Of a DNA stretch of 64,000 nucleotides, positions 16,859-45,075 are shown piece after piece. The notes beneath the pieces were generated by a model. The model was not told the origin of the DNA and did not search any database. It saw nothing but the letters and a program-made list of their open reading frames with translations. The stretch's first letter is position 1, and every line of letters begins with the position of its first letter. The position numbers and the translations under genes were made by a program. The stretch lies in the IMG/VR virus record IMGVR_UViG_3300026484_000087, positions 124,001 through 188,000 of that record; one strand, written 5' to 3'.

Positions 16859-16933
16859 CGCTTTTCCTTTGATAAATATTTTGAATGTTCAATTAAACTA
16901 CAAGAGTATAATAAATTATATAAAGGATAAACT

Positions 16934-19900: not shown

Positions 19901-22900
19901 AAAGATACTATAGTTAGTAAAGTATCTCCTATTAGTAAGAAGATAAGTCATGTTACTAATAAGTATACATTTAAGAAACCTACAATCGATGAAAAAGATA
20001 CTAATGCGGAAGAAGTTAGTAAGAAAGTAGAAAAGAAAACTACTAAACAAACTTATAAACCAAAACCGAGTAGAAAATATATTAAGAAAGAAGCAGGTGA
20101 AGTAATACCTGGTAAACCTACTATTATAGCTGGTAAGGCTTCTAGTTATAAATCTGCAGTAGTTCCTGATAGAAAACCTACATTTGATTTCAGCGATAAC
20201 AATGCTAAACAGGCTATAATTGATAAATTGAAGTTTACTAAAGGTGGACAGTATAAGTTCAGTTCTTCAGCGGATGTAGAGCAATTAAAAGATATACTTA
20301 AGTTACCGGCTATACCTGTTAAAATAGTTAGATTGTTATTAGATTTTAATTTTATAGGAACAATAGGTTCTGATAGCACAATGCCAGCATCATTTAGTGC
20401 AGCATTCGTAAAAGAGGTACCTGGTCTAAAAGATGACTATCTATTCTTAATAACTAAACAAACTTTAGATATGGCAGAGGCTAATCCAGAAGTACTTATA
20501 GAAATGATATCTCATGAACATGAGCATTTGGTTCAAACTACTGATGGTAGATTAAGATTTCCTCAACAGGATGAAAGTATAGCTGGTCACTACTACAGTG
20601 AAATAGATTTTGATAAAGATAAATTCAAAACAGCTACACATTTAATACCGTTTAAACATTACTTAGATTCTCCATGGGAAACAGAAGCATATAGAGAAGG
20701 TTACTCTAATGTATATGATTACTATATAGAGAATGGTATAATACCTGAAAAGACGACTAGAGAAGAGTTTATAAAACAAGCTCAAGACACTAACTTCAAA
20801 CAGATAAGAGACCAGAACAAAGTAATACTTAAACAATATGAGGATTTATTTAAACAGAATAATGCTCCATGGTATTATGATAAAGAAGGAGATATCGATT
20901 ATGATAAAATACCTTCTTTAAAAGCTATGCAAGAAACGCCTACAAGTTTCACATACGAAAGTCCAAATGGGCCAGATGACGGTGTAGTAGATGTTAATGC
21001 GGAACAGATTGATATTGGAGGCGATCCAAAAGTTGCTGCCGGTATAAAAACTGATAGAAAAGAAACCTTAAAAGATAAGCTATCTAGACAAAAAGATAAA
21101 CTTGTAAATACTGGAAAAGATATAAGTAAAAAGGTTACTGCTAATAAAACAGTAGATAAACTATTACATAAAAATAAAGATCTTACTAAGATGTCTTTTA
21201 GTACTGAAGATAATAGCTTTAATAAGTTAGCTCCGGTTAAAAGAGAAAATAGAATAGATAGTTTTATACAAAGTACTAAGGATACTGTTAAGGATACAAA
21301 GGATACTGTTGTAAACAGTAAACTATATAAAGACAGCATTGAAAAAATAAAATATATAGAAACATTCTTATCTAATAAAGTAGATAAAATAGTAACTCCA
21401 GATATTAAGAGAACAGTTATAGATAAAATAGATTCTTATGTTCTTGATAAAATGACAGCTCTTGGTAAGATAGATACTGATGATAAACGTAAAACATATG
21501 ATGGATTACAGAGTGCTAGGGATAAACTAAAAGCTATAGATGTAAATAAAAATACAACTAAGGATTTTATAAATAGTACAAAATCGGTATATTCAGATAT
21601 AAATAAATTTGGTCCGAATGAATTTAAAGAACTGGTATCTGATATAAAAACTAAATCTATAGATAAGCTTACTGAATTTAAAGGTAGGGTTGAAGATAAC
21701 GTTGCTATAAACAATATAAAAGATGATGTTATTGAAAGAGCTACTGACGTTAAAGAGTTTGTAGACAATAATGAAACAGTTAAAAACATAAAAAACTCTG
21801 TTAGTAATGTTGTTAAAGTTAATGATATAAAAGATAGTAAAGCTGGTAAGTTAATTAAAAAACATATTCCTAAAAGTTTTACTGATAGTATAGCCAACAT
21901 TAAATCTACTGTATTTGATGCTCCTAAGGATGAGAGAGTACATGAGTTCGATGTTAATGAAGAAGATAAAACTGAACAACAGGAACTAAAAGATATTCTG
22001 TTTAAGATAACTGATAGTTCTGATTCAGATAGTCTTAGATTAAATCTAAAAATATATTTGGAAAAAGTAAATAAAGAGATAGATAAAGTAAGTGACTTCA
22101 TTTCTAAAGATAAAGAAAGAGAACTTAAGTTTAGAGGAAGAGTAGATAAGTTAAAGAACATTAGTGAAAAACTATTTAATATAGACATTAATGAAAGTTC
22201 TACTATAAAAGATCTATCTAAAGAACTTAATGAGGGATTAGGTACTCTTATATCTGACGTTACGCCATCTAAGTTTAAAACTAGTAGCGGTCCAACGAAA
22301 GAAGAAGAGGATAAAGCTAAAGAAGAAAGTAAAGAAGATTCATTATTAGATATACTTGATTCTGATAATCCTATAGATGCATTACAAAGTAAAATTAAGA
22401 ATGCCGTTAAGTCTAAAATAAAAGGCTTATTAAAATCTGGAGTTAAAGGTGCTTTTAACTTAGGTAAAGGTATTATTCAGAGAGATATTGAACGTGGTAA
22501 AAAACTTAGAGCGTTCCTTAAAAAGAAACTATTTGATAAAAAGGATGGTTCACCTGGATTTGTTAAAACTAAACTAAATAAAGGTTTAAACTTTGCTGGT
22601 AAGGTTTTAAGAAAAGGTAAAGATCTAGCATCTGATATAAATGATAAAAGCATAAATGTAGTTAAAGCTGATATCAGAAATGGTGAACGTCTTAGAGGCA
22701 TGCTCTTTAAAAGTAAATCTAAAGATAATGAAACAAAACATGAAGAAGCTAAAACTACAGTAGAACCTATTGTCAAGATATCTAGTGCTACAAAAGATGA
22801 AAAAGTAAAAGAGATATCCGATAATGCTAAGGGTACAGTCAAAAAGAAAAAACCTATTAAATCTAAGAAATCTCATAAACAAAAAAGAGGAATAATAGAT

Positions 22901-25864
22901 CCTTCTACTATTATATATACTAGAGGAGAACATGGACAACGTGTACTTAAGAAAACTAGTATAGCTGGAAGTTCTAATAAACTTAGTACTAGTGCTGACA
23001 GAGATGGTGATGGTAGACGTGATGGTTCTTGGTTGGATAAGGTCTCTAAAACAAAAGATGATAAGGTAAAAGCATCTAAGAAAACAAAACAAGTAAAAGG
23101 TATATCTGGTAGTGCCAATGTAGTTAAATCTGCTTTCGATAGAGATGGTAGCGGTAGACGTGATGGTTCTTGGTTGGATAGACTTAAAAAGAAAAAAGAT
23201 ACTGCGATAAATAGTGGAAAGAACATATTAGCTAAGGCTAAAGAAAAAGGTTTTTCATGGTTGCCTATGTTAATTGGTGCTTTTGGTTTCTTAAAACCAT
23301 TGTTGGGCAAATTAATTGGTGGCGTAAGTAGTTTAGGTAAATTTATAGTAAATGGTGTTGGAAGTGCTTTTAAATCTGTTGGTAGTTTCTTATTAAATGG
23401 AATTAAAGGAATCTTCGGATCATTGGGTAAAATGTTATCTGGTCCATTAGAGGCTGTTAAGGGTTTTGTTTCTAATGGTATAGACAAAGCCAAGGCTGTT
23501 GCTGGAAAAGCTCTTGATGCTGCTAAGAATGCCGGTAGTAAGGTATTAGAAGTAGCTAAGAATTCTAAAGCTGGCAAAATTGTTGCTAACGTTGCAAGTA
23601 AGGCAAAAAATGCCATTGTATCAGGTGGATCTAAATTATTAAACGGAGTTAAGAATTCTAAGGTGGGTGGTGTAGTTGCTAAAGTAGCTAAGAAGATACC
23701 TACTGATGGAATACTTAAACTTCTTAAATCTTTTAAAGGTTTAATATTTAAGAAACTAGGTAAAAAAGCAGGGGCCACAGTTGCTGCTAAATTGGCTGGT
23801 AAAGTTGCATCTAGAATTGTTCCATTTGCCGGAGCAGCATTACTTGCTTATGATGCTGCTAAAATAGGTTATGATGTCTTCCATAATGGTACTAGTCTTA
23901 AGAGTGCCATATCTAAACAGATTCTTGGATTTGATTTATTTAGTAAAGACGATGTACCTAAAGATGAGGATGGTAATCCTATAAAACCAGATGAGCAAAC
24001 CTCGGAAGCTTCTAAAGGTAAAAAAGATAATTCAGCTAAAGTAGAAGCAGTTGTTAAAAAGAAAGTTAAACAAGCTGGATTCATAGATGTTGACGGTAAG
24101 AAAGTAAGGGTTTCTACTAAACAAATGGCTATGATAAAGGATTTAATGGATAAGGGTGAAAGTCAAAAAGCCTTAATGTTATTAAATACTTTAAAAGAAC
24201 AACAATATAAAGATAAAGATAATGATGCTAAAAATAAAGCGTTAGAAGAAGAGAATAATAAAATAGACGAATTTAATTCTAAGATAGATGAAAATAAAAC
24301 ACAATCTAAAAAAGTAATCAAAAAGAAAAGTAAAAAACTTAATAAAGTTATTTCTATTCTTAATGGCGATAAAAAGAAAATAAGCAAGAAAATAGATAAA
24401 GTATTTGAAGATAAGAATATTAATATAAAAGAAAAAAGAAAAAGAATAAGTAAATTAACGTATATAATAAACAGCATAAATACGATAATTCATGAATTAA
24501 AAAATAGTTACGATATAAATGATCCTGAGGATATTGAAGAACTTGTTAGTTTATATGGTAAAGGCTATAAATATGCTTTAAGTAAATCATTATTAGATAC
24601 TCTTAATGGCATAGATAAAAATACAAAAGATATAAATACAAAGGTAAAAAGTAAATATTTAAAAGATCTTAAAGAAGATAAGGATAACAATATAGAAAAA
24701 CCTAAGGAAGAAAAAGGTTTACTTAGTAGAGCTGCAGATAGCATAAAGAATTTCTTTGGATTTAGTAGTAAGAGAGAAGAACCTACTACAATGACCCCTA
24801 GTATTAATAGTGCCAGTACAAACAGTGGCGGTAAGATAGCAAAACTTAAACCTATGACCGCTACTGATAGTGATCTTATCTCGGACCTTAAACGTGATGA
24901 GGGAGTTGTATTACATACATATAAAGATCATCTAGGTTATAAAACCATAGGCACAGGACATCTTACTGATGAACGTAAAGGAGGCATTCCATTACGTAAA
25001 ATAATTGGTGAAGATAAAGATAATATCACTATGGATGAAAATGATACTATATTGAAATATGATATAGATAGAACATCTAAAGAGGTAGAATCTAAAATAC
25101 CATGGTTAAAGAAAAAACCAGAACCGGTTAAAAAATCTATTATTAACATGGCGTTTAACTTAGGTACTAATGGATTACTTAAATTCAAAAATACTTTAAA
25201 ACATGTTAAGAATGATGAGTACAATGAGGCTGCTCATGGCATGCTTAATAGTAAATGGGCAAGACAAGTTGGTAATCGTGCTACAAGAATAGCTAGTACC
25301 GTTGCTTCTGTAGATTATGCTACAGCAAAACAACATGATAATAAAGTTACTGAAAAGCCTTCTGTATTTAATACAGATAAAGCTATAAGTAATAGTAGAA
25401 AAGTTGTTCCAGTAGCTAATAATGTTACCTATAAACCAAGACCTAAAACTGAAGTTAAATCAGTTGCTAAAGTTGAAAGTGTAGCAGCTCCTGTTAGTAC
25501 TACAAATACTAGTATAGGTAAAACTATAACTAAGAATACTACCAAAATAAAAGATCCAGCTAAAACTTTAGCGGTTGAAAGTAATAAAAAACTATCTGCT
25601 GTTGGAGAAGTTAGCGATAAATCATTAAGCGAATTAAAAACACTTAATAAGACAATGACTGATTCTCTAGATATACAGAGACAAACATTAGAAGCAATGA
25701 CTCAAATGTTAAATTTGAATCACGACATGCATAATAGAAGTTTAAGTATGGATAAAGATATAGTGGATGTAGAGGTATCTAAAACAAAAAAAATAGCTCC
25801 TCCGCAAATGCAATCTATGCCTAAACCAGCTATGGGACTTGAAAAAAGAAGTTTCGCAAGTTAA
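16934..25864 (+). CDS. giant tail-associated protein (phiKZ gp181-like) with C-terminal T4-type lysozyme and internal HExxH domain
   Basis: 2976 aa, divergent from the RNAP gene; YYRKSLELQY, N.ALPDLVK and ITKIIPSLL motifs; two DRDG.GRRDGSWLD repeats; DEG...YKD.LG..TIG lysozyme motif. Confidence 0.88.
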   Translation: MADDTEIDLDDDIGLDDDDMDFGFEDPFSEPPPPKDTREAVSRSISKVGSSFMDEFTDDKVEVASEMVKASIPKRLSTEASGYGSVVDSFKKDLNTSGTEIKNAAIPMIKAVESFVPEGGRLESFMNLAKEKLGMNEEERTSEDIAADAAARAAGSVAEVLGEFQDKETAKDAINSVIQNKKDLSNIELQAGMAGHLEAMSNFNIDVTNAYYRKSLELQYRHLFTANEQLDITKQGFETFKNQLESIVANSALPDLVKTKNSEFMKHRLLERAGESLFARTGVFDSLKKKLSAEVQGVTSIIANGMTGLGDAADMVKSTAEMSEMAGGKEGMLGSLMAGGVKGFVGNKIGDIFGKTAIGKKGIDLVKDLTMDMSGTFDNLAENREDGLLKNIFSGLSSFTSNEDEERSFGINKIDRDGVALFDGKVHTSITKIIPSLLSKILKEVSSSRSGNEEEELRFDYDTGSFKTKSDISDNLTTKLDNKLLDSGTTFSIDRILNDIDKEIKLNLSEEELADIKENILMYTINGKSLNPKTLEKNGFYDDLNPELADKFKTAIDKYLNVEDDKLRDTRVSFLNKELNNIKTNAPSPQDILESYDSSGSMDVLVDKGFVKLDEKTGDYKLDKDNYRELLGKSVRNIKDKEEVKDKEYKSFAEKLLADKMKKAGISKDEESVTNEPSSNTGKFFKGIATSVKGFSTNLEQNAIDLVDGKKDISGKISELGKGTKEYITGKKDLSNLSFSTEASDDFNPLAPIKVKRSLLTDFKTGKDFVSGIHSISDVKNILESTDKYKTIESKIKAVKKLAEESENPKEFVESFRKTDEYKKLSTSGKAAIDKVSGTISTVGKAIKEDVENTKTFKTAETAVTRGKKLASDVVNSKPIKKITESKIVTNAIEDLDGIKTKVTNLANLSDMSTVVEELWVKVESKIEELEALDKNDVINKRIEALRNLSSDIEKFEVDENNINESRKTVLGFISTLSKLLSTAIATDVKDTIVSKVSPISKKISHVTNKYTFKKPTIDEKDTNAEEVSKKVEKKTTKQTYKPKPSRKYIKKEAGEVIPGKPTIIAGKASSYKSAVVPDRKPTFDFSDNNAKQAIIDKLKFTKGGQYKFSSSADVEQLKDILKLPAIPVKIVRLLLDFNFIGTIGSDSTMPASFSAAFVKEVPGLKDDYLFLITKQTLDMAEANPEVLIEMISHEHEHLVQTTDGRLRFPQQDESIAGHYYSEIDFDKDKFKTATHLIPFKHYLDSPWETEAYREGYSNVYDYYIENGIIPEKTTREEFIKQAQDTNFKQIRDQNKVILKQYEDLFKQNNAPWYYDKEGDIDYDKIPSLKAMQETPTSFTYESPNGPDDGVVDVNAEQIDIGGDPKVAAGIKTDRKETLKDKLSRQKDKLVNTGKDISKKVTANKTVDKLLHKNKDLTKMSFSTEDNSFNKLAPVKRENRIDSFIQSTKDTVKDTKDTVVNSKLYKDSIEKIKYIETFLSNKVDKIVTPDIKRTVIDKIDSYVLDKMTALGKIDTDDKRKTYDGLQSARDKLKAIDVNKNTTKDFINSTKSVYSDINKFGPNEFKELVSDIKTKSIDKLTEFKGRVEDNVAINNIKDDVIERATDVKEFVDNNETVKNIKNSVSNVVKVNDIKDSKAGKLIKKHIPKSFTDSIANIKSTVFDAPKDERVHEFDVNEEDKTEQQELKDILFKITDSSDSDSLRLNLKIYLEKVNKEIDKVSDFISKDKERELKFRGRVDKLKNISEKLFNIDINESSTIKDLSKELNEGLGTLISDVTPSKFKTSSGPTKEEEDKAKEESKEDSLLDILDSDNPIDALQSKIKNAVKSKIKGLLKSGVKGAFNLGKGIIQRDIERGKKLRAFLKKKLFDKKDGSPGFVKTKLNKGLNFAGKVLRKGKDLASDINDKSINVVKADIRNGERLRGMLFKSKSKDNETKHEEAKTTVEPIVKISSATKDEKVKEISDNAKGTVKKKKPIKSKKSHKQKRGIIDPSTIIYTRGEHGQRVLKKTSIAGSSNKLSTSADRDGDGRRDGSWLDKVSKTKDDKVKASKKTKQVKGISGSANVVKSAFDRDGSGRRDGSWLDRLKKKKDTAINSGKNILAKAKEKGFSWLPMLIGAFGFLKPLLGKLIGGVSSLGKFIVNGVGSAFKSVGSFLLNGIKGIFGSLGKMLSGPLEAVKGFVSNGIDKAKAVAGKALDAAKNAGSKVLEVAKNSKAGKIVANVASKAKNAIVSGGSKLLNGVKNSKVGGVVAKVAKKIPTDGILKLLKSFKGLIFKKLGKKAGATVAAKLAGKVASRIVPFAGAALLAYDAAKIGYDVFHNGTSLKSAISKQILGFDLFSKDDVPKDEDGNPIKPDEQTSEASKGKKDNSAKVEAVVKKKVKQAGFIDVDGKKVRVSTKQMAMIKDLMDKGESQKALMLLNTLKEQQYKDKDNDAKNKALEEENNKIDEFNSKIDENKTQSKKVIKKKSKKLNKVISILNGDKKKISKKIDKVFEDKNINIKEKRKRISKLTYIINSINTIIHELKNSYDINDPEDIEELVSLYGKGYKYALSKSLLDTLNGIDKNTKDINTKVKSKYLKDLKEDKDNNIEKPKEEKGLLSRAADSIKNFFGFSSKREEPTTMTPSINSASTNSGGKIAKLKPMTATDSDLISDLKRDEGVVLHTYKDHLGYKTIGTGHLTDERKGGIPLRKIIGEDKDNITMDENDTILKYDIDRTSKEVESKIPWLKKKPEPVKKSIINMAFNLGTNGLLKFKNTLKHVKNDEYNEAAHGMLNSKWARQVGNRATRIASTVASVDYATAKQHDNKVTEKPSVFNTDKAISNSRKVVPVANNVTYKPRPKTEVKSVAKVESVAAPVSTTNTSIGKTITKNTTKIKDPAKTLAVESNKKLSAVGEVSDKSLSELKTLNKTMTDSLDIQRQTLEAMTQMLNLNHDMHNRSLSMDKDIVDVEVSKTKKIAPPQMQSMPKPAMGLEKRSFAS
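22997..23180 (+). repeat. two intragenic DRDG(D/S)GRRDGSWLD repeats
   Basis: GGTAGACGTGATGGTTCTTGGTTGGATA occurs twice, 141 bp apart. Confidence 0.85.
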
Positions 25865-25871
25865 AACATAT

Positions 25872-25906
25872 CATATAGTACATAGGTTAAACCTATGTAC
25901 TATATG
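25872..25906. terminator. hairpin between convergent genes
   Basis: CATATAGTACATAGGT-TAA-ACCTATGTACTATATG. Confidence 0.7.
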
Positions 25907-27709: not shown

Positions 27710-28189
27710 TTATTCCTCCTTAACTTGGTTATTAATTATACCATCAATGATATTTTCTATATTAATAATATATGGCTGTATCTTCATCGATATCCAGTAT
27801 TTCTTTGTATCTTCAATGTTACTGTGGTAGTTATTGTATAATGTAACAAATTCTATTGCTATTGTTAGAAAGTCCAACCATTTCTTGTTACCATCTTCAT
27901 AAATTACATTATCCTTATTTGTATACCACATACTAAAACGCTTATTTTTTAATTTATTTTCTGTAATGTTATTAGCGTTAAATTCATCTATCTCTATATC
28001 ATTTATCATATTTGTTATAAGATCTATATACTCACCTATCGTGGGTTCTAAAGAATTTATTATAATGCTAGAGTTTGTTTTATATGGGTCCACTTTTACA
28101 TACTTATGTACACATATTAATTTTTTTATTAATGTTTTGCAGTTATAGCATTCTTTATTATAGAAAATCTTTTTAAATATATTTAACAT
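27710..28189 (-). CDS. hypothetical protein
   Basis: 159-aa ORF, AAGGA RBS. Confidence 0.65.
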   Translation of the reverse strand: MLNIFKKIFYNKECYNCKTLIKKLICVHKYVKVDPYKTNSSIIINSLEPTIGEYIDLITNMINDIEIDEFNANNITENKLKNKRFSMWYTNKDNVIYEDGNKKWLDFLTIAIEFVTLYNNYHSNIEDTKKYWISMKIQPYIINIENIIDGIINNQVKEE

Positions 28190-31020: not shown

Positions 31021-31044
31021 TTAGAGGCAATACCTCTAACTACT
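31017..31044. terminator. hairpin between convergent genes
   Basis: GTAGTTAGAGG-CAATA-CCTCTAACTAC. Confidence 0.65.
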
Positions 31045-31856
31045 TATTTGTATGCCTCTAATCTGCTCTTTATTCTGGCATATGCTATTTTGGTATCGTT
31101 GTTTGGATCTGATGTAGTGCCATTAGGTGTTATATAAACCGATTCGTCCAAAACTTTTAATAGATCGGTTAATACCGACAATAGGTTTTCTGTACCATTA
31201 TTGATGTTAAAATGTGAAGCGTTCAGTGTTACTGAGTTGCTTGCTGTCATTGTAAGATCACTAGCTTCTAAATTAAATGACTTAGTTTTCAACTTTATAT
31301 CGTTATTAAATACCATACTAAGTAATTCAGCAGCACTGTCAAACCCAATTTTATTACCTTTATCATCAAATATTTCAAATAGACCTACTTTAGTATCTAT
31401 TTTCATATCCCATGTAGTTTCTTCTCCATCATTCTTGGCAGTATGTAAGCTTACCAACTTTTCAATATTGTCAAATAGCATACTATATGAATTATCATTG
31501 GTTAATTCTTTTGCTTCATCGTCATTACTAAATCTAAAATAATGAGTACCTTTTGTATGTATCGCAGATTTATCTAATGTGCTAAATACAAAGAACCAAT
31601 AATAAACACCAGTATCTCGATGTCTAAATATAATTACCTCTTTACCAGCATTTAACGGTGGTACCTCATCATGAATATTCTCTAATAAACCCAGCCATGT
31701 AGCGTTTAGATTTTGTGGCGGTGCTTCATCTGCAGGAAAGAATATCTTTATGTCTTCGTTGTCTATTCTAATACATTTTACCGTATCGTTTCCAACAGAA
31801 GTATCTTCAGTAAGTCTGTATAATCCTATAGTCTTTAATCTAGTTAACGGTTTCAT
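31044..31856 (-). CDS. baseplate spike-like protein, paralogue without HxH tip
   Basis: Aligns by eye with 31866-32735 (A.WL, V..FR, ND.E.TT.D..I.TK.G, D.KGN). Confidence 0.6.
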   Translation of the reverse strand: MKPLTRLKTIGLYRLTEDTSVGNDTVKCIRIDNEDIKIFFPADEAPPQNLNATWLGLLENIHDEVPPLNAGKEVIIFRHRDTGVYYWFFVFSTLDKSAIHTKGTHYFRFSNDDEAKELTNDNSYSMLFDNIEKLVSLHTAKNDGEETTWDMKIDTKVGLFEIFDDKGNKIGFDSAAELLSMVFNNDIKLKTKSFNLEASDLTMTASNSVTLNASHFNINNGTENLLSVLTDLLKVLDESVYITPNGTTSDPNNDTKIAYARIKSRLEAYK

Positions 31857-31865: not shown

Positions 31866-32735
31866 TTATCCACATTTAGGTGGTGATGTATCTATTCCTA
31901 AGTTACCACAATGTACGTGAGTTTTATCAATACAGATATCGTCATGGGTAATTGTACCACCAAGATATTTAACGCTACCAATGTTATGAGTATTATCGCT
32001 ACTCGTAGTAGTCCATTTATTTGCGTTCATTGTTAGGTTTGGTGTAGTTATTGTCATTTTGTTTGTAGCATTATATTCTATGATTTTAGTATTGAATACT
32101 ATTTTATCAATTATGTTAGCAGTGAGAGTATTTATAGAACTATCAAATAATAATTCATTGCCTTTACCATCTATAATCGAAATAACGCCCTTTTTAGTAT
32201 TTATCATAATATCATATGTCGTATGTTCTCCATCGTTATCTGATGTATGTATACTTACTTCTTTATTAATTGTATCTACTTTAGTCCAATAGGTATTATC
32301 ATCATGTAGATTTTCCATGAAAACATCTGTATTACTATAATAATGTATTACCTTCTCTTTTCTTCTAAGATCAAATTCATTATACATTGTCATCCAATAA
32401 AATTCATCTTCATTGGCATATCTAAATAACATTACTTGTTCACCTTTTTTAACCATAGGTGCAGTTTTACGGTTACTGTGTCCAAGTGCTAACCATTTAG
32501 CTTTTATAGTAACGCTTTTATTTAAAACTATTACTTCGGCTTCATTATCTATATCTTCGTTAGATACAGTTATGCCTTCTACATAAGCTATATCGCCATC
32601 AACATGTGTCATGTTTTCTATTGGAAAACATTCTACAATAAAACCATCTTCCTCAATATCCTTGGCTACTATAGCCACTGAGTACATGTGAAATCTACTA
32701 ATATCATTAAGACGATTATTATTATTCATCACCAT
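31866..32735 (-). CDS. baseplate central spike (phiKZ gp164/gpV-like)
   Basis: AKWL, APMVKKGEQV, beta-rich C-terminus ending in THVH; next to SbcC. Confidence 0.7.
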   Translation of the reverse strand: MVMNNNNRLNDISRFHMYSVAIVAKDIEEDGFIVECFPIENMTHVDGDIAYVEGITVSNEDIDNEAEVIVLNKSVTIKAKWLALGHSNRKTAPMVKKGEQVMLFRYANEDEFYWMTMYNEFDLRRKEKVIHYYSNTDVFMENLHDDNTYWTKVDTINKEVSIHTSDNDGEHTTYDIMINTKKGVISIIDGKGNELLFDSSINTLTANIIDKIVFNTKIIEYNATNKMTITTPNLTMNANKWTTTSSDNTHNIGSVKYLGGTITHDDICIDKTHVHCGNLGIDTSPPKCG

Positions 32736-32837: not shown

Positions 32838-34133
32838 TTATAATAAAAGATTAATAATATATGAGTACTCTTCCACTAAGTTATCAAAATTGTTTTCACT
32901 AATCAATATTGAACTATAAGTACTGGTACCAAAAGTGGGAAGTTTATAAGCAATATATTCGCCATCATCAATACCTATACTAAAAATACTTTCACCGAGT
33001 AAATTCATTTTGATTTTTGCTTTAACTCTAACATAATTGTTATTAGTTATACTTGGTATAATAATAGATTTAAGCATTAATAATAACTCATCTACATGAT
33101 ATAAATCACCAAAGAAACCTTTTATGTTATTAAGCGTTATAGCATGGTCTCTAGTATCAAAATCAATATCTAATGATCTAATCGATGTCTCAAACATTAA
33201 ACTTTGTAACGTTTCATTTAAGGCATATGCTATTTTACTATTTTTACTACCATCTTTTAAAGTTGAGAAGGAACCATGAAATAATGGAGCAACATCAATT
33301 ATTTCAACTATATCTTTAATATCAGTGTTTATGTTATTTAGTAAATCTAAAGTTAATGTGTTTACTATTATTGTTCCACTTAATATGCCTAAGGTATTTA
33401 GAAAATGATTTTCAAAGATCTGTCCCTCTACTAAACTACATATAGCTGTATTTAAATTATCTATTGAACCCATACTTATTTTATTCATTTCATAATCAAG
33501 TATAATGGCATTTAATAACTCAGACGTACTGTGTGATAATATGTTATTCCTAAATTTAGAATTTATTGGAATAATGCTAGAATCGTTTCTTATATCGGTA
33601 TAGTCTGCAGTAAATGTGTTTTTAGCATTTATAGCTCTTATGATATCTTCTGGTCTACATGTTTTTAATTTTGTTTCTTTATCTGAACTACTTATTATCT
33701 GATAATTCTTCATATTGCGAACATGTGTGGGTTCTTTAAAATTATCTACAGTATACTCTGCCACGCTATTTATGTATAGTAATGTTCTATCATTTATTGT
33801 GTTGTCATCAGTAAACCCTAATACTATTGTAACTATGTTAATACCATTGTGCGAATGTTCAGTTTTAATCATAAAGCTGTAACGTTCACTTTCCCAGCCA
33901 TTGTCAATGACTGCATCTCTAGTCTCTTCAGAATACCTAAGTACATCAGGGTTTATTTTACTTACGCAAAATGGTTCAACCAGTGTACCTTTATTTATAA
34001 TTGTATCTATTTTGTCTATGTTTTCATATGATATATTTCCTACTACATCCCTACTACATATGTCACTGTAACTGTTCATCTTAAAGAATTTTATTTCCTT
34101 TATTATAGGACTATTTTCTGGAATTTTAAACAT
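32838..34133 (-). CDS. divergent homologue of a phiKZ-like core protein (tentatively gp69/PicA/Imp1 family)
   Basis: 431 aa from the AAGGAG-preceded ATG 34133; I.NGW...R..FM, GFTD, YINSV, RPEDI and PTF motifs; family recalled from memory. Confidence 0.45.
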   Translation of the reverse strand: MFKIPENSPIIKEIKFFKMNSYSDICSRDVVGNISYENIDKIDTIINKGTLVEPFCVSKINPDVLRYSEETRDAVIDNGWESERYSFMIKTEHSHNGINIVTIVLGFTDDNTINDRTLLYINSVAEYTVDNFKEPTHVRNMKNYQIISSSDKETKLKTCRPEDIIRAINAKNTFTADYTDIRNDSSIIPINSKFRNNILSHSTSELLNAIILDYEMNKISMGSIDNLNTAICSLVEGQIFENHFLNTLGILSGTIIVNTLTLDLLNNINTDIKDIVEIIDVAPLFHGSFSTLKDGSKNSKIAYALNETLQSLMFETSIRSLDIDFDTRDHAITLNNIKGFFGDLYHVDELLLMLKSIIIPSITNNNYVRVKAKIKMNLLGESIFSIGIDDGEYIAYKLPTFGTSTYSSILISENNFDNLVEEYSYIINLLL

Positions 34134-34188
34134 TATGTACTCCTTATTGTTAGAGGTATCATCTAGGATACTTAACCGACATAACTTT

Positions 34189-34240
34189 GATACTGCCACG
34201 TATCTACATATATTATATATGGTTGAAAATAAGTGGAAAG
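34189..34240 (-). promoter_or_regulatory. putative early promoter plus 5' hairpin
   Basis: TTTCAACCATATATAATATATGTA-GATAC-GTGGCA-GTATC. Confidence 0.6.
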
Positions 34241-34296: not shown

Positions 34297-36747
34297 ATGT
34301 ATATAGAAAATTTAACACTTAGCAGATATAAAAGATTATTTTTGGCATATATAAATAAATTGGAATATACCCCAGAAAAAAGAATAAATATAATTGTTGG
34401 TAAAAATGGATCTGGTAAGTCCTCCACTTTAAAAGAACTTACTCCGTTGCCAGCTAATTTAACTAAAGACTATGATGAAGATGGTTATAAAAAAATAACT
34501 ATAAAACATAAGGGTAGTAAATATGTGTTGACTTCTGGCATAGTAGGTAAGAATAAACATAGTTTCATGGTAGATAATGAAGAGCTTAATCCAGCTGGTA
34601 CAAGAAAAGTACAACTTATGTTAGTTAAAGAACACTTTAATTTAACACAAGATATACACGATACTCTTATAGGACTAAAGAACTTTACATCTATGTCAAC
34701 CGTAGAAAGAAAAAATTGGTTTACAAATATATCAACAGTAGACTACACTTATGCTATAGGCGTATATAATAAGATAAAGCAAAGACATAGGGATATAGTG
34801 GGAGCATTAAAGATATCTCAAACAGAATTAACCAAAGGTAGCGATAGTATTAAAACCGAAGAGGAAATAAATTCTATAAAGGGTGAAATAAAAATACTTA
34901 AAGAGATATTGGATCTGGCTATGTCTTCTAAAGAACAATTTAGATCACCAGTAGATATTGATGAAACCAAACTTATGATGCTTGTTGATATGGGTTATAA
35001 AGTATTGTCAGAACTCAATAAACCAGATCTAGATGTAGATATAGATGTTGCTATTGGATCTATTAGTAATGAAATTACTCTTTTAAAGAATGAGATAGAA
35101 AAACAAAATAAAATATTGAAAGATCTAATGTTTATGGAAGATACTAAAGATAGTTCTGATGCCAAACTTATAGATGAAACAATACTTGAGTTGCAAAAAA
35201 AGATAAGTACACTAGAAGATTCATTTATAGTGAAAATACCAAGAGATGATCTTCCTGAATTTATAAACTCTTTTAATTATAGATATCAAGACATCATAGT
35301 TATATTAAATGAAATTTCTATTAGGAATGATGCTGATTATGATATAGACCTATATAAAAAGAATTTAACAGATATTGATGTTATAAATGCAAATATAAAT
35401 ACATTTGTAAATCTTAGAGAGACTTTATTTAAAACGAAGGATTCTATGGAACATAATAGAGATCATAATGAAGTTGAATGTGTTAAGTGTGGTAATATTT
35501 GGTCTATAGGTTATGACGAAAAAGAGTATAAGATAGTTATTGATAAGATAGATAAATTAAGTGTTAAAATAGAGAAACTTAAAAAAAGACTTGATGAACT
35601 TAATGAAGTAGTAAGTACTTTTAAAGAGAAAATAACCTATACTAAACAGTTGTTATCTATTAAAGACAATGAAACTAATTTATACAATAAACAGGTTTTA
35701 GAACATGTTCTTGATAAATACAATGTTCTTACCGAAAGCAAAGCTATTATAGACTATATGTATAAAGTTAAGAATAATGTAGCAGAGCTTGAAAAGATAC
35801 CTATTTATGTAAAAGAATATGAAATGCATCTTAAAGATAAAGAGATATTAGAAGTAAAACGTAAAATGGAGGTTGAATACTTCAATACTAATAAGGATAA
35901 CATAGAAGAAGAGTTAAGTAACAACAAGGTCAGATTAAAAGAACTTGATAATAAGTTAAACTCTGTTAAATCCTATAAATCCAATTTATCTATACTTACA
36001 AAGATATCTGATACTCTTATAGATAGTATTAAGAAATTGAACTCTAATAAACAAGTAGAGATATCTATGGCCAGAAATAATAGTCTTAACGAATCCATTA
36101 AAGTTATAAATCTTGAGATAAGTAAATTAGAATCTATAATATCAGATTCTTTATATAACTCTAAACTTATAGAGAATAACAAAGAGAAAGTTATAGAGTT
36201 GGATAAAAGAAAGAAAGCCACCGCTTTATTATTGGAAGTAATGTCTCCTAATAACGGTTTAATAGCTAAATCGATAACACAATTTCTTGATATGTTCATA
36301 AACGATATGAATTCTATAATAAATAAGGTATGGAATTATAGTATAGATGTTCTTCCTTGTAAGATAGATGATGGAGTTGATTTAGATTATAAGTTTGAGG
36401 TTAGGGTAGATGGTAGAAACGTTATGGAGGATGTTAGTAAGACTAGTTCATCTATGAAGGAGATAATTAATTTAGCTTTTAAAATAGTGAGTATGAAATA
36501 TCTTAATATGGAAGATTATCCATTATACTTAGATGAGTATGCTGCATCATTTGACGCACATCATGCTATAAAAGCATATGACGGTATAGAGACGTTAGCT
36601 TCATCCAGCTTTAATCAAATTTTCATGATATCGCATTATGAAAGTACATACACCAGGTTCAGTGATTGTGATATATCTGTATTAGATGCAGAGAATATAT
36701 TGCTTAATGGAGATATGGAAATAAATAGAGTATTAAAACTTAGTTAG
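34297..36747 (+). CDS. sbcC: SbcC/Rad50-like ATPase
   Basis: Walker A GKNGSGKS, coiled coils, CVKC zinc hook, SSSMK signature, LYLDE Walker B, ISH motif. Confidence 0.9.
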   Translation: MYIENLTLSRYKRLFLAYINKLEYTPEKRINIIVGKNGSGKSSTLKELTPLPANLTKDYDEDGYKKITIKHKGSKYVLTSGIVGKNKHSFMVDNEELNPAGTRKVQLMLVKEHFNLTQDIHDTLIGLKNFTSMSTVERKNWFTNISTVDYTYAIGVYNKIKQRHRDIVGALKISQTELTKGSDSIKTEEEINSIKGEIKILKEILDLAMSSKEQFRSPVDIDETKLMMLVDMGYKVLSELNKPDLDVDIDVAIGSISNEITLLKNEIEKQNKILKDLMFMEDTKDSSDAKLIDETILELQKKISTLEDSFIVKIPRDDLPEFINSFNYRYQDIIVILNEISIRNDADYDIDLYKKNLTDIDVINANINTFVNLRETLFKTKDSMEHNRDHNEVECVKCGNIWSIGYDEKEYKIVIDKIDKLSVKIEKLKKRLDELNEVVSTFKEKITYTKQLLSIKDNETNLYNKQVLEHVLDKYNVLTESKAIIDYMYKVKNNVAELEKIPIYVKEYEMHLKDKEILEVKRKMEVEYFNTNKDNIEEELSNNKVRLKELDNKLNSVKSYKSNLSILTKISDTLIDSIKKLNSNKQVEISMARNNSLNESIKVINLEISKLESIISDSLYNSKLIENNKEKVIELDKRKKATALLLEVMSPNNGLIAKSITQFLDMFINDMNSIINKVWNYSIDVLPCKIDDGVDLDYKFEVRVDGRNVMEDVSKTSSSMKEIINLAFKIVSMKYLNMEDYPLYLDEYAASFDAHHAIKAYDGIETLASSSFNQIFMISHYESTYTRFSDCDISVLDAENILLNGDMEINRVLKLS

Positions 36748-36770
36748 TATAACCATATGGTTATACTAAC
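36743..36770. terminator. perfect 28-bp palindrome between convergent genes
   Basis: GTTAGTATAACCAT|ATGGTTATACTAAC. Confidence 0.65.
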
Positions 36771-38322: not shown

Positions 38323-39762
38323 ATGTTAGATAATGAAAAACAATATGCTGCTTGTGTGTATACTGATGGTAGTGCTAATAATATGTTGAAGATATGGGGA
38401 TGGGGTTCTCACGGTTATATATATGACATTAATGAAAAGCCTAAGGTTACTAAAAATAAGCCAGTTAATATGGTAGTTACTGACATAGGATATTTAGAAC
38501 CAGGAGAGTTGAAGATCAAACCAAATGAATTAGTTAATCCAGTAGTTTATTTAGATTGGTATGGATCTTACCGTAGAGCTGGTACAAATAATGTTGGAGA
38601 ATTATTAGCTATAATAGAAACAGTAAAAAAATTACTAGAACATAATGTTACTAAGATAACTTTATTCTCAGATTCTACATATGCTATTGGTGTATTTAAA
38701 TCTAGCAAAACTAAAACAAAAGAATCTATAATTAAAAACGTAGAAGCTAATCAGGACTTATGGTTACTTGCTAAAGATATAAATGATACTGTAGAAAAAA
38801 GTAATATAGAGTTAACTATAGAAAAGATAAAAGCACATAATGGACATCTTGGTAATCATACGGCAGATGATATGGCTATGCTTGGTAGATACAATTCTAC
38901 TAAAATAATGAATGATGAAGAGATTGATTTTACATTAAGGGAACCACAAGGTTATTGGAAGCCTAAAAATGAAAGACATCCTTTCTTAACAGCTAAACAA
39001 ATATTCTTTACCAATAACGATAAGAATCCAAATGAGTATTCTTTATTAGGTTATAAGGAAGAAAACGAGATAGGTAAAAAAATGCATATAGCCAACTTTG
39101 GTTTAGTTGTTTTAAAAGATAAAGATGAGACTATAGACCTTATTAAGAATACATATAATGAGTTACTGGGAGAACACTCAGTAGTGTCTACTGTTAGAAT
39201 GGATCTTTTATTTAAACCAGATAACTTTAAATATGTAGAAAGATATGGTAAGAAATGTTTAATGCCTTTAAATAAAAATAGAAGGGGTATAAGTATACTA
39301 GAAAAAGAAATAGTGGCTAACTCTATAAATCCTCCAGCGTTAGCTTATACAGCCTTAAATAACCTAGACAACCTAAGAGTTGTATTAAATGATTTTAACG
39401 CTCTGAAGGCAGATAAAGGCTATATAACAGGCAAAGAATTTATTGACATTACAGATATGTATTATACTACTAATGATAAAGGTAAAAATGTATTTAGACA
39501 GGAATTAGGTAATGATATTAAAAGTTTAAAATATGTCTATGAAGTAGATGATAAAAAAGCAGATCTTATAATTCAATTTGGTAAAGACATACTTGCTAGA
39601 AATCCTATGAAGAAACTAGAAAAATTAGAACCTAAAGTATATTTAGTTATAGTAAATAGTAACAATGTAAAGTTGGACTATTATACCATAGTTGATATAG
39701 AAAGTACAGGCGATCAATCTGTATGGAGTAATTTTTATGCAAAGACAGTTTTTATAAAGTAA
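38323..39762 (+). CDS. rnhA: RNase HI with C-terminal extension (phiKZ gp155-like)
   Basis: YTDGS, TNNVGEL, SDS.Y and KAHNGH.GN..AD motifs; AAGGA RBS favours ATG 38323. Confidence 0.9.
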   Translation: MLDNEKQYAACVYTDGSANNMLKIWGWGSHGYIYDINEKPKVTKNKPVNMVVTDIGYLEPGELKIKPNELVNPVVYLDWYGSYRRAGTNNVGELLAIIETVKKLLEHNVTKITLFSDSTYAIGVFKSSKTKTKESIIKNVEANQDLWLLAKDINDTVEKSNIELTIEKIKAHNGHLGNHTADDMAMLGRYNSTKIMNDEEIDFTLREPQGYWKPKNERHPFLTAKQIFFTNNDKNPNEYSLLGYKEENEIGKKMHIANFGLVVLKDKDETIDLIKNTYNELLGEHSVVSTVRMDLLFKPDNFKYVERYGKKCLMPLNKNRRGISILEKEIVANSINPPALAYTALNNLDNLRVVLNDFNALKADKGYITGKEFIDITDMYYTTNDKGKNVFRQELGNDIKSLKYVYEVDDKKADLIIQFGKDILARNPMKKLEKLEPKVYLVIVNSNNVKLDYYTIVDIESTGDQSVWSNFYAKTVFIK

Positions 39763-39791
39763 GAGTAGTATAGCATATGCTATACTACTCT
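39762..39791. terminator. perfect 30-bp palindrome between convergent genes
   Basis: AGAGTAGTATAGCAT|ATGCTATACTACTCT. Confidence 0.65.
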
Positions 39792-43515: not shown

Positions 43516-43560
43516 GATACTGCCATGTATCTATATTAATAATATATAAGTAAAAAAAAT
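43516..43560 (-). promoter_or_regulatory. putative early promoter plus 5' hairpin
   Basis: TTATATATTATTAATATA-GATAC-ATGGCA-GTATC. Confidence 0.6.
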
Positions 43561-43564: not shown

Positions 43565-43596
43565 TAACTACTTAGGACATATGTCCTAAGTAGTTA
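43565..43596. terminator. perfect 32-bp palindrome
   Basis: TAACTACTTAGGACAT|ATGTCCTAAGTAGTTA. Confidence 0.6.
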
Positions 43597-45075
43597 CATC
43601 TTAACGATTTTTATAAGGTTATTAACCATGCCTATTTGATGGTTTATTAAACTATAATTAGTCATTGCTATAGATATCAAACTAGCATTATTATCTAGAC
43701 CAGTAGATAATGCATGTAATGTAGATTTAGTTATTTCAAACTTATTATCTTTACTAACAATATGTTCATGTAGCATATTAGTTTTTTCAGCTATCTCTTT
43801 AACTAAGCTATCTATTTTACTAAAATTAACCTTACCAAGTTTATTTCCTAGAATGGCAGTATCTTCAGCAAGCTTAGGCAATGAAGTTAAATTTGGTACA
43901 AGTTTACCAACTGGCATTCTATCGTTGTTAGAGTTAACATCTATAACCCCAGATAGATTATTTTTTATCTCATAAGCAACTTCTTCGGTTTTTTCAAAAA
44001 GTGTTTTCTTAGGTTTAAAAGATTTTCTGTAATCTTCATCAGACATTATCTTACTTAAGATGACATTTAACTCACTAAGAGAATCTATAATTAAAGAACC
44101 TAACATATGTTCATTTTTACTAAGTTTATTTTCAAGTTCTATTAGGTTAGTGTTTAAACCAATAACGACTGGGGTTTCTCTAGATTCTATACTAGCATAA
44201 CTTTTATTCTTAATAATTCTCTTAAGAGAACTAATATCACTTCTAAGTTGTCTAAGTTCTTTATTGCTTTCACCAGATATACCACTTATGGTTTCTGTAA
44301 CACCAGAGAATAATTCGCTAATAGAATTTAATCTATTTAAAACAAAGTTATTTATATTACTAATTAAACCATTTTCATTACTAAGCATATTAACCGCTTC
44401 ATCTACTGATTCAAAACTAAGAGTTTCTTCTAACGTTACTAACTGATTAACTTTTTCCATATTCTTTTTCCTTTTATCCCATACATCTTGTATGTTCTGT
44501 GATTGACTACCCCATTTAAGATTGGTAGCATTACAATTCTCTTTATTATCGTCCTTATGCATAACGACAAAACCTTTTGGACCAACTCCATGAAATGCAG
44601 TACAAACCAATATATGTACATACTCCATTTTACTTTTGGTGCTACCATCTTTAAAAATAGATACTTTAAGATAGTGTCCAGCACTAACACCTTTAGTAAA
44701 ATTACCTGTTTTCAATGTAAGTATTTCTCCAAGGTTACTCGCCAGATACTTACTAAATCCAGGTATAGGTTTCCATATTCTATCCATAGCATTTAATGGG
44801 ACAGGTATCCTATTTGATACATCTACATTAACTGGCAACTCAATTGGTATTATGTTTTTATGTATATAAGGAGCTTCCTCATCTACATATAGGCCATCAT
44901 CTGATAGACTAAATACTTTATAGTACCATCCATCAAGTTTTCTATGTTTTTTCTTAATAGCTTTAACAAGGTCTTTTAATGTCTTATACATTTTTATATA
45001 ACCAGTGCTATTTACCTTAATTTCTATTTTTTTATTAAGTATATCTGTTTTATAAATTGGTAAATATAATACCAC
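43594..45075 (-). CDS. NUMOD4/HNH endonuclease fused to a putative virion head protein; internal start at 44460
   Basis: WKPIPGFSKYLASNLG (NUMOD4) and VHILV..AF, VMHKDDNKENCNATNLKW (HNH); helical C-terminal part with SFE/SNE sites and its own AAGGA RBS. Confidence 0.8.
   Translation of the reverse strand: MVLYLPIYKTDILNKKIEIKVNSTGYIKMYKTLKDLVKAIKKKHRKLDGWYYKVFSLSDDGLYVDEEAPYIHKNIIPIELPVNVDVSNRIPVPLNAMDRIWKPIPGFSKYLASNLGEILTLKTGNFTKGVSAGHYLKVSIFKDGSTKSKMEYVHILVCTAFHGVGPKGFVVMHKDDNKENCNATNLKWGSQSQNIQDVWDKRKKNMEKVNQLVTLEETLSFESVDEAVNMLSNENGLISNINNFVLNRLNSISELFSGVTETISGISGESNKELRQLRSDISSLKRIIKNKSYASIESRETPVVIGLNTNLIELENKLSKNEHMLGSLIIDSLSELNVILSKIMSDEDYRKSFKPKKTLFEKTEEVAYEIKNNLSGVIDVNSNNDRMPVGKLVPNLTSLPKLAEDTAILGNKLGKVNFSKIDSLVKEIAEKTNMLHEHIVSKDNKFEITKSTLHALSTGLDNNASLISIAMTNYSLINHQIGMVNNLIKIVKM

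What the first reader, a model, noticed from the sequence alone, without database searches (positions are those of the whole stretch)
32838..34133. Stand-alone, shortened homologue of a core protein, possibly nuclear-import factor PicA/Imp1
Seen: a 431-aa monocistronic gene with its own promoter-hairpin and palindrome, between the spike and sbcC genes. Its motif series (NGW..R..FM, GFTD, YINSV, RPEDI, PTF) matches my recollection of the core gene next to the nvRNAP gp68 gene, which I believe is gp69 (PicA/Imp1). That block is not here. Inference: a relocated gene or second copy that could alter import selectivity or act as a decoy.
Basis: inference. Interest (0 to 1): 0.6.

Follow-up and report, generated by a model that had tools for sequence, protein, structure and literature searches.

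The report
Second, divergent Imp1/PicA import-factor gene
This nucleus-forming jumbo phage from a hydrothermal-vent metagenome has the usual gene for the protein that licenses import into the phage nucleus, plus a second, very divergent stand-alone copy, which is rare and could show how import selectivity evolves.

Summary
Window 32838-34133 (- strand) is an intact 431-aa gene with its own ribosome-binding site, a promoter-like motif with a hairpin upstream, and a perfect 30-nt palindrome downstream.

The protein belongs to the phiKZ gp69 (Imp1/PicA) family. It matches phrog_3141 at E 3.6e-28. A confident model (pLDDT 94) superposes on 15 gp69-family models at TM 0.77-0.90. It keeps 14 of the 15 near-invariant family residues.

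It is a second copy. The canonical 489-aa gene lies 140 kb away in the conserved SbcD-gp66-Imp6-gp68-Imp1-gp70-gp71 block, and the genome also encodes chimallin.

The extra copy sits in the normally about 64-bp gap between the gp164 (baseplate) and gp165 (SbcC) homologues. Its branch is 8-10 times longer than the canonical copy's, and it has lost second-tier family motifs (DPNM, TNxT).

Ten cultured chimalliviruses and 10 of 11 related IMG/VR contigs have one copy. One unrelated contig has an independent second copy. I found no orthologue among 1.84 billion protein representatives.

The most likely function is a second cargo-licensing import factor with changed specificity. This is inferred, not shown. 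Decoy, decaying-duplicate and repurposed-fold readings remain open.

The parts
32838..34133 (-). Coding sequence of the extra Imp1/PicA-family paralogue (431 aa plus stop; protein P0002)
   Evidence: ORF and translation. phrog_3141 E 3.6e-28 over residues 11-423. 25% identity end to end with the canonical copy, E 4e-33. Model pLDDT 94.4, with TM 0.77-0.90 to gp69-family models.
34140..34145 (-). Ribosome-binding site AAGGAG, 6 nt before the ATG
   Evidence: Read directly from the sequence. AAGGAG-type words are enriched upstream of this genome's genes.
34131..34176 (-). 5' leader plus start codon, 46 nt, identical to the leader and ATG of an unrelated 306-aa orphan gene (G000 112340-113260). 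It contains a short inverted repeat, GTATC-N6-GATAC.
   Evidence: Pairwise alignments. Logan's graph gives this stretch as a separate 46-nt unitig at twice the flanking depth (record 2).
34189..34220 (-). Promoter-like motif: AT-rich box (34209-34220, one mismatch to the core ATATATTAT) and hairpin GATAC-GTGGCA-GTATC (34189-34204). It belongs to the class found before the nvRNAP subunit operons and the gp68-Imp1-gp70 operon.
   Evidence: 13 strict copies, all on the - strand and all intergenic. Genes behind them include RNAP subunits phrog_3015 and phrog_2987 and the gp68 homologue. The box resembles the experimentally defined AR9 virion-RNAP early consensus AAATATATATTAT-(6N)-G (PMC5312081).
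32796..32825 (.). Perfect 30-nt palindrome 12 nt after the stop codon; terminator-like hairpin that closes the one-gene unit
   Evidence: One of about 50 such hairpins at gene ends genome-wide.
31866..32735 (-). Left flank (context): homologue of phiKZ gp164, a baseplate assembly protein
   Evidence: phrog_3216 E 6e-51. blastp to phiKZ gp164 E 8e-25.
34297..36747 (+). Right flank (context): SbcC-like ATPase, homologue of phiKZ gp165, transcribed divergently
   Evidence: phrog_77 E 3e-54. blastp to phiKZ gp165 E 2e-61.

Best explanation
The gene encodes an intact, fast-evolved paralogue of Imp1/PicA, the chimallivirus nuclear import factor. It was inserted as a self-contained one-gene cassette (early-type promoter with 5' hairpin, borrowed leader and ribosome-binding site, ORF, terminator hairpin) into the normally about 64-bp divergent gap between the gp164 and gp165 (SbcC) homologues. 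The canonical Imp1 gene stays in its conserved block with Imp6 and the nvRNAP subunit genes.

Shown: family membership by profile and fold; second-copy status; the insertion site; the shared promoter class; loss of second-tier family motifs.

Inferred: the protein is made early, along with chimallin, nvRNAP and the canonical Imp1. It sits at the chimallin shell and offers a second set of cargo-licensing surfaces. In phiKZ, distinct Imp1 surfaces license distinct cargos. On this reading the phage imports a cargo set that the canonical copy handles poorly, or keeps two import specificities apart. Because the paralogue lost the DPNM and TNxT motifs that canonical copies keep, it probably no longer uses one of the canonical partner interfaces.
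For: Family membership.
- phrog_3141 E 3.6e-28.
- Own-genome paralogue at E 1e-28 to 4e-33, aligned end to end.
- That paralogue equals PHIKZ069 / PhiPA3 gp063 by tblastn and lies in a complete gp65-gp73 syntenic block.
- Model pLDDT 94.4, pTM 0.92. Foldseek TMq 0.77-0.90 to 15 gp69-family models, E down to 3e-31.
- 14 of 15 columns conserved at 90% or more are retained.

Genome context.
- Chimallin homologue phrog_4795 E 2.8e-40.
- Only this core gene is duplicated, so the contig is not a mix of two phages.
- An 18,950-bp independent contig joins the gene to the baseplate side with no differences.
- gp164|gp165 are adjacent in 6 of 8 other genomes, with 63-64 bp spacers in phiKZ and RSF1.

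Expression signals.
- The promoter class is shared with the nvRNAP operons and the gp68-Imp1-gp70 operon.
- The AT box matches the AR9 virion-RNAP early consensus.
- PicA is an early gene in model phages.

Mechanistic background.
- Distinct Imp1 surfaces license distinct cargos, and lineage-specific add-on factors exist.

Independent recurrence.
- An unrelated 285-kb phage has its own second copy.
- The two extra copies share 8 losses among 43 conserved columns, where 4.6 would be expected (hypergeometric p 0.02).
Against: - No orthologue exists among 1.84 billion representatives or in the word-indexed database, so selection on the gene cannot be measured.
- It keeps only 58% of columns conserved at 70% or more (family median 86%). 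It is the lowest in the family at the 60% level. This is also what relaxed constraint would produce.
- Its AT box deviates from the core at one position. In AR9 a single deviation silenced a predicted early promoter.
- No RNA data exist; the sequence is in a single DNA run.
- The complex prediction with the Imp6 homologue gave no verdict.
- The high pLDDT leans on an alignment of canonical homologues.
- The join to sbcC crosses a 46-nt repeat at which Logan's k=31 graph breaks, so that adjacency rests on the original assembly and on synteny.
Confidence: 0.5

Rival explanations
1. Decaying duplicate. The copy arose by duplication, escaped constraint and is drifting. It is still open and foldable but has no role.
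For: The terminal branch is 2.6-3.2 substitutions per site, against 0.33-0.35 for the canonical copy. Retention of second-tier conserved positions is the lowest in the family. No orthologue is known. The nearest complete relative, G004, has one copy. The promoter box is off consensus.
Against: The 431-codon frame is intact. 14 of 15 near-invariant residues are kept. All deletions fall in loops and tails, and the aligned core runs end to end. A complete expression cassette is present, with a consensus ribosome-binding site and a terminator. The 46-nt leader is identical to that of another gene, which implies recent maintenance or exchange. Phage genomes usually delete dead genes quickly (general knowledge).
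Confidence: 0.17
2. Decoy or interference factor. The paralogue does not import the phage's own cargo. Instead it titrates or blocks something, for example a competing chimallivirus's cargo or import partners, or a host factor, or it acts as a dominant-negative gate.
For: Import selectivity differs sharply between related phages and is proposed to be shaped by inter-phage competition. Dominant imp1 alleles exist in phiKZ. The paralogue has lost motifs that every canonical copy keeps, as expected if one canonical interaction was dropped.
Against: There is no direct evidence. Expressing a dominant-negative form of an essential factor at the same time as that factor would harm the phage itself unless it is tightly partitioned. 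Nothing nearby suggests an exclusion module.
Confidence: 0.12
3. Repurposed fold. The Imp1 fold is used for a job unrelated to nuclear import, for example a structural or assembly role, given its position beside baseplate genes.
For: It lies directly upstream of two gp164-like baseplate genes on the same strand. The fold has no solved relatives that would tie it to one activity.
Against: It is separated from the baseplate genes by a terminator hairpin. It has the promoter class of the nvRNAP and Imp1 operons, not a shared late unit. In six other genomes gp164 abuts sbcC with nothing between them, so the position reflects an insertion, not module membership.
Confidence: 0.08
4. Assembly artefact. 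The second copy belongs to another co-occurring phage and was joined in by mis-assembly.
For: This is a metagenome contig from a single run. Logan's graph breaks at the repeated leader and promoter.
Against: The gene is on one 18,950-bp contig with this phage's baseplate genes, with no differences, and the depth is the same on both sides (17 and 18.6). It carries this genome's own promoter motif and leader. Its GC (27.5%) is within about 1 SD of the gene mean. No other core gene is duplicated.
Confidence: 0.03

Closest known systems
phiKZ gp69 = Imp1 / PicA (PhiPA3 gp63, 201phi2-1 gp125); PHROG 3141
   Same: Same profile family and same predicted fold. Same near-invariant residues and motif series: NGW..R..F, G[YF]TD, YINS, RPxD, PTF. 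The genome also encodes chimallin and both phage RNA polymerases.
   Different: 431 aa against 557 aa. It lacks the N-terminal tail, four surface loops and the long C-terminal tail. It is not between gp68 and gp70 and not near Imp6. It is a second copy of a gene that is single-copy in 10 of 10 cultured genomes tested by HMM. It has lost the DPNM, TNxT and PTFaDsL..P second-tier motifs. Direct BLAST to gp69 is only E 1e-4 to 3e-3 over the N-terminal 150 residues.
The canonical Imp1 homologue of the same genome (G000 16409-17878, 489 aa)
   Same: The two align end to end (11-429 against 26-485) at 25% identity, E 4e-33. Both follow the same promoter class, the canonical copy through its gp68-led operon. 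A sister relationship is not rejected (AU p 0.32).
   Different: The canonical copy has relatives at 52% identity and a short branch (0.33). The window copy has none above about 31% and a branch of 2.6-3.2. The canonical copy keeps 88% of the columns conserved at 70% or more; the window copy keeps 58%.
Second Imp1-family gene of IMG/VR contig IMGVR_UViG_3300046516_001816 (G010, 224706-226019; 470 aa)
   Same: It is also an extra, divergent, stand-alone copy in a genome that keeps a canonical copy in the gp68/gp70 context. It has lost the same DPNM and TNxT positions.
   Different: It is not orthologous: 20% identity, E 5e-7. The genome differs (285 kb, 56% GC). It lies among orphan genes, not at the gp164|gp165 junction, which is intact there.
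Lineage-specific import add-ons of phiKZ (Imp2, Imp4, Imp5, Imp7)
   Same: A functional analogy only. These are non-core factors that widen or tune what the Imp1 pathway imports, for example Imp7 for nvRNAP.
   Different: They are unrelated in sequence and much smaller. They act as adaptors or enhancers of Imp1 rather than as copies of it. No Imp7 homologue was found here.

Membership tests
Imp1/PicA (phiKZ gp69 family, PHROG 3141) | Significant full-length match to the family profile | tested here: met
   phrog_3141 E 3.6e-28, residues 11-423 on profile positions 6-479 of 510. Genome-level scan E 7.5e-29. 247 family hits in the exhaustive search.
Imp1/PicA (phiKZ gp69 family, PHROG 3141) | Family fold (no solved relatives; known from AlphaFold models) | tested here: met
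   Model pLDDT 94.4. TMq 0.77-0.90 to 15 chimallivirus gp69-family models in BFVD. No PDB match, as reported for PicA.
Imp1/PicA (phiKZ gp69 family, PHROG 3141) | Near-invariant residues (R28, I76, G79, W80, R84, F87, G106, N122, R160, P161, D163, L265, A302, P399 in window numbering) | tested here: met
   14 of 15 columns conserved at 90% or more are retained.
Imp1/PicA (phiKZ gp69 family, PHROG 3141) | Second-tier conserved motifs (G.iDPNM loop, TNxT..G, PTFaDsL..P) | tested here: not met
   Only 58% of columns conserved at 70% or more are retained, against a family median of 86% and a 5th percentile of 72%. The DPNM, TN.G and D/L/P positions after PTF are replaced or deleted.
Imp1/PicA (phiKZ gp69 family, PHROG 3141) | Position in the conserved block between the nvRNAP gp68 homologue and the gp70 homologue, near Imp6 (gp67) | tested here: not met
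   That position is filled by the 489-aa canonical copy. The window gene lies between the gp164 and gp165 homologues.
Imp1/PicA (phiKZ gp69 family, PHROG 3141) | Encoded by a chimallin-encoding (nucleus-forming) phage | tested here: met
   Chimallin homologue at G000 62738-64651: phrog_4795 E 2.8e-40, blastp to gp54 E 3e-13, next to the gp55 homologue.
Imp1/PicA (phiKZ gp69 family, PHROG 3141) | Early expression | tested here: inconclusive
   It has the promoter class of the nvRNAP and gp68-Imp1-gp70 operons, which resembles the AR9 virion-RNAP early consensus. However, its AT box has one core mismatch, and no RNA run holds the sequence.
Imp1/PicA (phiKZ gp69 family, PHROG 3141) | Binds Imp6 (gp67), needs Imp3, forms puncta on the nuclear shell, licenses cargo import | not testable with these tools
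   The complex prediction with the Imp6 homologue (phrog_3284 E 2.5e-17) gave no verdict. Localisation and import need experiments.

The most novel reading that the evidence does not exclude
Some nucleus-forming phages run two Imp1-type licensing proteins in parallel. The second copy, freed from one canonical partner interface (the DPNM/TNxT surface), forms a separate import route or gate with its own cargo list. This solution has arisen independently at least twice in uncultured chimalliviruses.
Probability: 0.3. Interest if true: 0.75.

Novelty: new variant of a known kind. Interest (0 to 1): 0.55.

Why it matters
Imp1/PicA is the one essential, universally conserved selectivity factor known for protein entry into the phage nucleus. 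How it recognises cargo and couples to the chimallin lattice is still open. In every cultured chimallivirus examined it is a single-copy core gene, and I found no report of a paralogue in the papers searched.

A natural duplicate keeps the fold core but has replaced its surfaces and dropped specific conserved motifs. That amounts to a ready-made dissection. The positions kept in both copies point to what the fold needs. The positions lost in two independent paralogues point to an interface that only the canonical copy needs (a candidate Imp6, Imp3 or shell contact). The diverged surfaces point to cargo choice.

The finding also shows that the import system can be expanded by duplication, not only by unrelated adaptors such as Imp2 or Imp7.

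Tried and rejected
- Pfam: nothing above threshold for the protein, its canonical paralogue or the neighbours.
- PDB by sequence, by Foldseek and by VIA-align over 48,161 chains (best Z 6.3, within the stated noise): no solved relative.
- tblastn of the window protein against 50,697 phage records: no hit at E 1e-3.
- Word-indexed search: only the protein itself.
- Single-sequence scans of IMG/VR with the protein, its canonical paralogue and SbcC: nothing.
- A 47-sequence alignment was too diverse for the locus scan. A 10-sequence one worked.
- Complex prediction of the paralogue with the Imp6 homologue: score 0.01, no verdict. This counts neither for nor against binding.
- The 57-row careful tree did not finish in two runs. 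I replaced it with a 25-row careful tree from which the other long-branch rows were left out.
- Long-branch hits P0042 and P0006, and the top hits P0003 and P0004, were checked as possible paralogues elsewhere. All sit in canonical gp68/gp70 context. P0007's contig is too short to tell.
- RNA fold of the leader: z -0.66, not distinguishable from shuffles.
- phiKZ Imp7 (gp166), Imp2 and Imp4: no homologue by BLAST. Imp3 (gp59) gave only a weak hit (E 0.049) to window 27710-28189, which no PHROG supports.
- No alternative genetic code was used.

Full report
**What is in the sequence**

The window is bases 124001-188000 of a 206,244-bp IMG/VR virus record (77% complete by CheckV, about 30% GC).

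PHROG scans of the window show a phiKZ-like jumbo phage. They find multisubunit RNA polymerase pieces, an SbcC-like ATPase, an RNase H-like protein, a UvsX-like recombinase, baseplate proteins and virion proteins.

The finding's coordinates hold a - strand frame ending at 32838. The ATG at 34133, six bases after AAGGAG, gives 431 aa. The longer GTG-started frame would read through the promoter region and overlap sbcC.

**Which family**

Pfam has nothing. PHROGs gives one full-length hit, phrog_3141, an 'unknown function' family, at E 3.6e-28.

A search of the phage's own genome finds a second member at 16409-17878 (489 aa), with 26% identity and E 2e-28. The two align end to end at E 4e-33.

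That second gene hits phrog_3141 at E 7.8e-62. By tblastn it matches PHIKZ069 (E 3e-13) and PhiPA3 gene 063 (E 2e-15), along with 133 chimallivirus records in total.

phiKZ gp69 is Imp1 (Kokontis et al.) and PicA (Morgan et al.). It is an essential, shell-associated protein whose separate surfaces license the import of separate cargos.

BLAST of phiKZ gp63-gp73 against the genome's ORFs recovers the whole block in order: SbcD (gp65), gp66, Imp6 (gp67), gp68, gp69, gp70, gp71 and gp73. A chimallin homologue lies next to the gp55 homologue.

So the canonical Imp1 gene is in its usual place, and the window gene is an additional copy.

**Fold**

I built a 116-sequence alignment from the exhaustive HMMER search. 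With it, AlphaFold2 gave a model with pLDDT 94.4 and pTM 0.92.

Foldseek against BFVD returned 15 chimallivirus models at TMq 0.77-0.90, with E down to 3e-31. They come from phages (RSF1, MadMel and others) whose gp69 homologue the canonical copy also hit.

Nothing in the PDB matches, whether by sequence, Foldseek or an all-against-representatives structural scan. This agrees with the published statement that PicA has no structural homologues.

**How it differs from canonical copies**

Relative to its genomic sister and to phiKZ gp69, it lacks about 15 N-terminal residues, four loops and the long phiKZ C-terminal tail. No domain is missing.

It keeps 14 of the 15 columns conserved at 90% or more. 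It keeps only 58% of those conserved at 70% or more, against a family median of 86% and a 5th percentile of 72%. At the 60% level it is the lowest in the family. The losses include the DPNM loop after GYTD, the TNxT..G block, and the D, L and P positions after PTF.

The phiKZ positions where cargo-specific escape mutations map are variable across the whole family. They therefore say nothing about which cargos this copy recognises.

In trees its terminal branch is 2.6-3.2 substitutions per site, against 0.33-0.35 for the canonical copy. It falls inside the non-phiKZ clade (support 99/98) but is otherwise unresolved. An AU test does not reject it as sister of the canonical copy (p 0.32).

The data therefore allow either an in-lineage duplication followed by rapid change or an older origin. 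GC content gives no sign of foreign origin: 27.5%, against a gene mean of 30.1 ± 2.4%.

**How unusual is a second copy**

- The exhaustive search of 1.84 billion representatives found 247 family members but none closer than 31% identity. I used this search because the claim rests on the absence of relatives.
- The best hits, and the other long-branch hits whose contigs I could read, are canonical copies flanked by gp68-like and gp70-like genes.
- The phrog_3141 profile finds exactly one copy in ten complete cultured genomes: phiKZ, PhiPA3, RAY, Noxifer, SA002, LucasX, RSF1, FLC9, Vibrio Yong MS32 and Bacillus AgentSmith.
- It finds one copy in 10 of 11 related IMG/VR contigs.
- The exception is a complete 285-kb, 56% GC contig. 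It has a canonical copy plus a 470-aa second copy among orphan genes.
- That copy is not orthologous to the window gene (20% identity, E 5e-7). It has nevertheless lost eight of the same conserved positions, where 4.6 would be expected (p 0.02; the positions are clustered, so treat this as suggestive only).
- The full-text searches I ran found no paper that mentions an Imp1/PicA paralogue.

**Where it sits**

The left neighbour is the homologue of phiKZ gp164 (baseplate assembly protein). The right neighbour is the homologue of gp165 (SbcC-like).

These two genes are adjacent and divergent in phiKZ and RSF1, with 63-64 bp between them. They are also adjacent in FLC9, Yong MS32 and two IMG/VR genomes. 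They are not adjacent in AgentSmith, nor in the rearranged nearest relative G004.

Here the gap is 1,561 bp and holds exactly this gene with its signals. It is an insertion into a conserved junction.

**Signals**

*Promoter class.* Upstream lies a 32-nt motif: an AT-rich box followed by a GATAC-N6-GTATC hairpin. It has 13 strict copies in the record, all intergenic and all on the - strand.
- The genes behind them include the nvRNAP subunit homologues (gp55, gp71, gp74 type) and the gp68-Imp1-gp70 operon.
- The chimallin gene has the AT box without the hairpin.
- The box (ATATATTAT, then about 6-7 bases, then G) resembles the experimentally mapped AR9 virion-RNAP early consensus. That paper states that vRNAP promoters of phiKZ-related phages are extended AT-rich conserved sequences.
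- I therefore read this as the early promoter class. This is inference.

*This gene's copy of the box.* It has one mismatch in the core. In AR9 one mismatch sufficed to silence a predicted early promoter, so the strength of expression is uncertain.

*Shared leader.* The last 46 nt up to and including the ATG are identical to those of an unrelated 306-aa orphan gene at G000 112340-113260, and similarity continues about 130 nt upstream. The expression cassette is thus a recent copy or is being homogenised, in contrast to the very old-looking coding sequence.

*Terminator.* Downstream is a perfect 30-nt palindrome. It is one of about 50 long perfect hairpins at gene ends.

**Is the assembly sound**

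The sequence is held by one DNA run from a hydrothermal-vent metagenome, probably the source. There is no RNA run.

Logan's independent contigs of that run include an 18,950-bp piece that covers the baseplate genes and the whole paralogue with no differences, at depth 17. The sbcC side has depth 18.6. The graph breaks only at the repeated leader and promoter, where a 46-nt unitig has double depth.

An all-against-all comparison of the genome's proteins shows no other duplicated core gene. A chimera of two phages is therefore unlikely. The join to sbcC rests on the original assembly and on conserved synteny.

**Most likely mechanism**

Shown: an intact, foldable Imp1-family protein, encoded as an autonomous unit with the promoter class of the early nucleus-building genes, in a phage that also has chimallin, Imp6 and a canonical Imp1.

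Inferred: it is a second licensing factor at the nuclear shell with different cargo surfaces, and it has probably lost one canonical partner interface. I put this at about 0.5.

Rivals:
- a decaying duplicate (0.17);
- a decoy or interference factor in competition between phages (0.12);
- a repurposed fold (0.08);
- an assembly artefact (0.03).

The complex prediction with the Imp6 homologue gave no verdict and is not used as evidence either way.

**Verdict**

The function is open. The feature is a new variant of a known kind. It is of moderate interest to people who work on the phage nucleus, because it offers a natural contrast for mapping Imp1 interfaces.

Noticed in passing
window 34189-34220; also 43516-43547 and 51333-51364; ten further strict copies elsewhere in G000 (for example 7731-7762, 19465-19495, 62224-62255): A conserved promoter-like motif: an AT-rich box (core ATATATTAT) followed by TAGrTAC-N(2-3)-GGCAGTATC, which forms a 5-bp hairpin. 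There are 13 strict copies, all on the - strand and all intergenic. About 25 AT boxes occur in total, including one upstream of chimallin. The box matches the AR9 virion-RNAP early consensus, which suggests the early regulon of this phage can be read from sequence.
   Followed up: partly
window 34131-34176 and G000 113258-113303 (L016): A 46-nt leader plus ATG is identical between the Imp1 paralogue and an unrelated 306-aa orphan gene with no PHROG or Pfam family. Similarity extends about 130 nt upstream. These two genes have a leader about 30 nt longer than other genes with this promoter. The extra stretch holds a second short inverted repeat (GTATC-N6-GATAC). It could be a shared regulatory element or the result of recent recombination.
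   Followed up: partly
window 761-798, 11991-12026, 25872-25906, 36743-36770, 39762-39791, 43565-43596, 54882-54915, 63899-63931, and about 40 more in G000: Long perfect hairpins (13-19 bp stems, AT-rich with a GC-containing centre) sit at the ends of genes or operons throughout the genome. One lies right after the gp68-Imp1-gp70 operon (G000 14920-14953). They are probably this phage's terminators and differ from the GC-rich phiKZ terminator motif.
   Followed up: partly
IMG/VR contig IMGVR_UViG_3300046516_001816 (G010) 224706-226019; L039:4698-6110:+: An unrelated, complete 285-kb, 56% GC chimallivirus carries its own second, divergent Imp1-family gene (470 aa, phrog_3141 E 2e-39) among orphan genes, besides a canonical copy at 80446-81894.
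   Followed up: partly
window 31044-31856 and 31866-32735 (- strand): Two tandem paralogues of the gp164-like baseplate assembly protein (33% identity over 212 aa; both phrog_3216). The nearest relative G004 appears to have one.
   Followed up: no
window 27710-28189 (- strand): A 159-aa ORF gives a weak BLAST hit (E 0.049) to phiKZ gp59 (Imp3). No PHROG supports it. It is unresolved whether this is the Imp3 homologue.
   Followed up: partly
window 43594-45075 (- strand): A 493-aa ORF hits many HNH endonuclease PHROGs (best E 2e-35). It may be a homing endonuclease and was not examined.
   Followed up: no
window 16934-25864 (+) and 54922-61179 (-): Two giant ORFs of 2,976 and 2,085 aa were not analysed.
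   Followed up: no
G004 (IMGVR_UViG_3300036715_000626) 70000-82000 and 99000-106000; L041, L042: The nearest near-complete relative (205 kb, terminal repeats, 33.5% GC) is rearranged. Its sbcC lies beside chimallin, and its gp164-like gene lies beside the DNA polymerase. The gp164|gp165 junction is therefore not universal.
   Followed up: partly
whole record G000: The only public run that holds the sequence is labelled as a hydrothermal-vent metagenome. A roughly 30% GC chimallivirus from that setting has no close cultured relative (best protein identities to cultured phages are about 23-38%).
   Followed up: no
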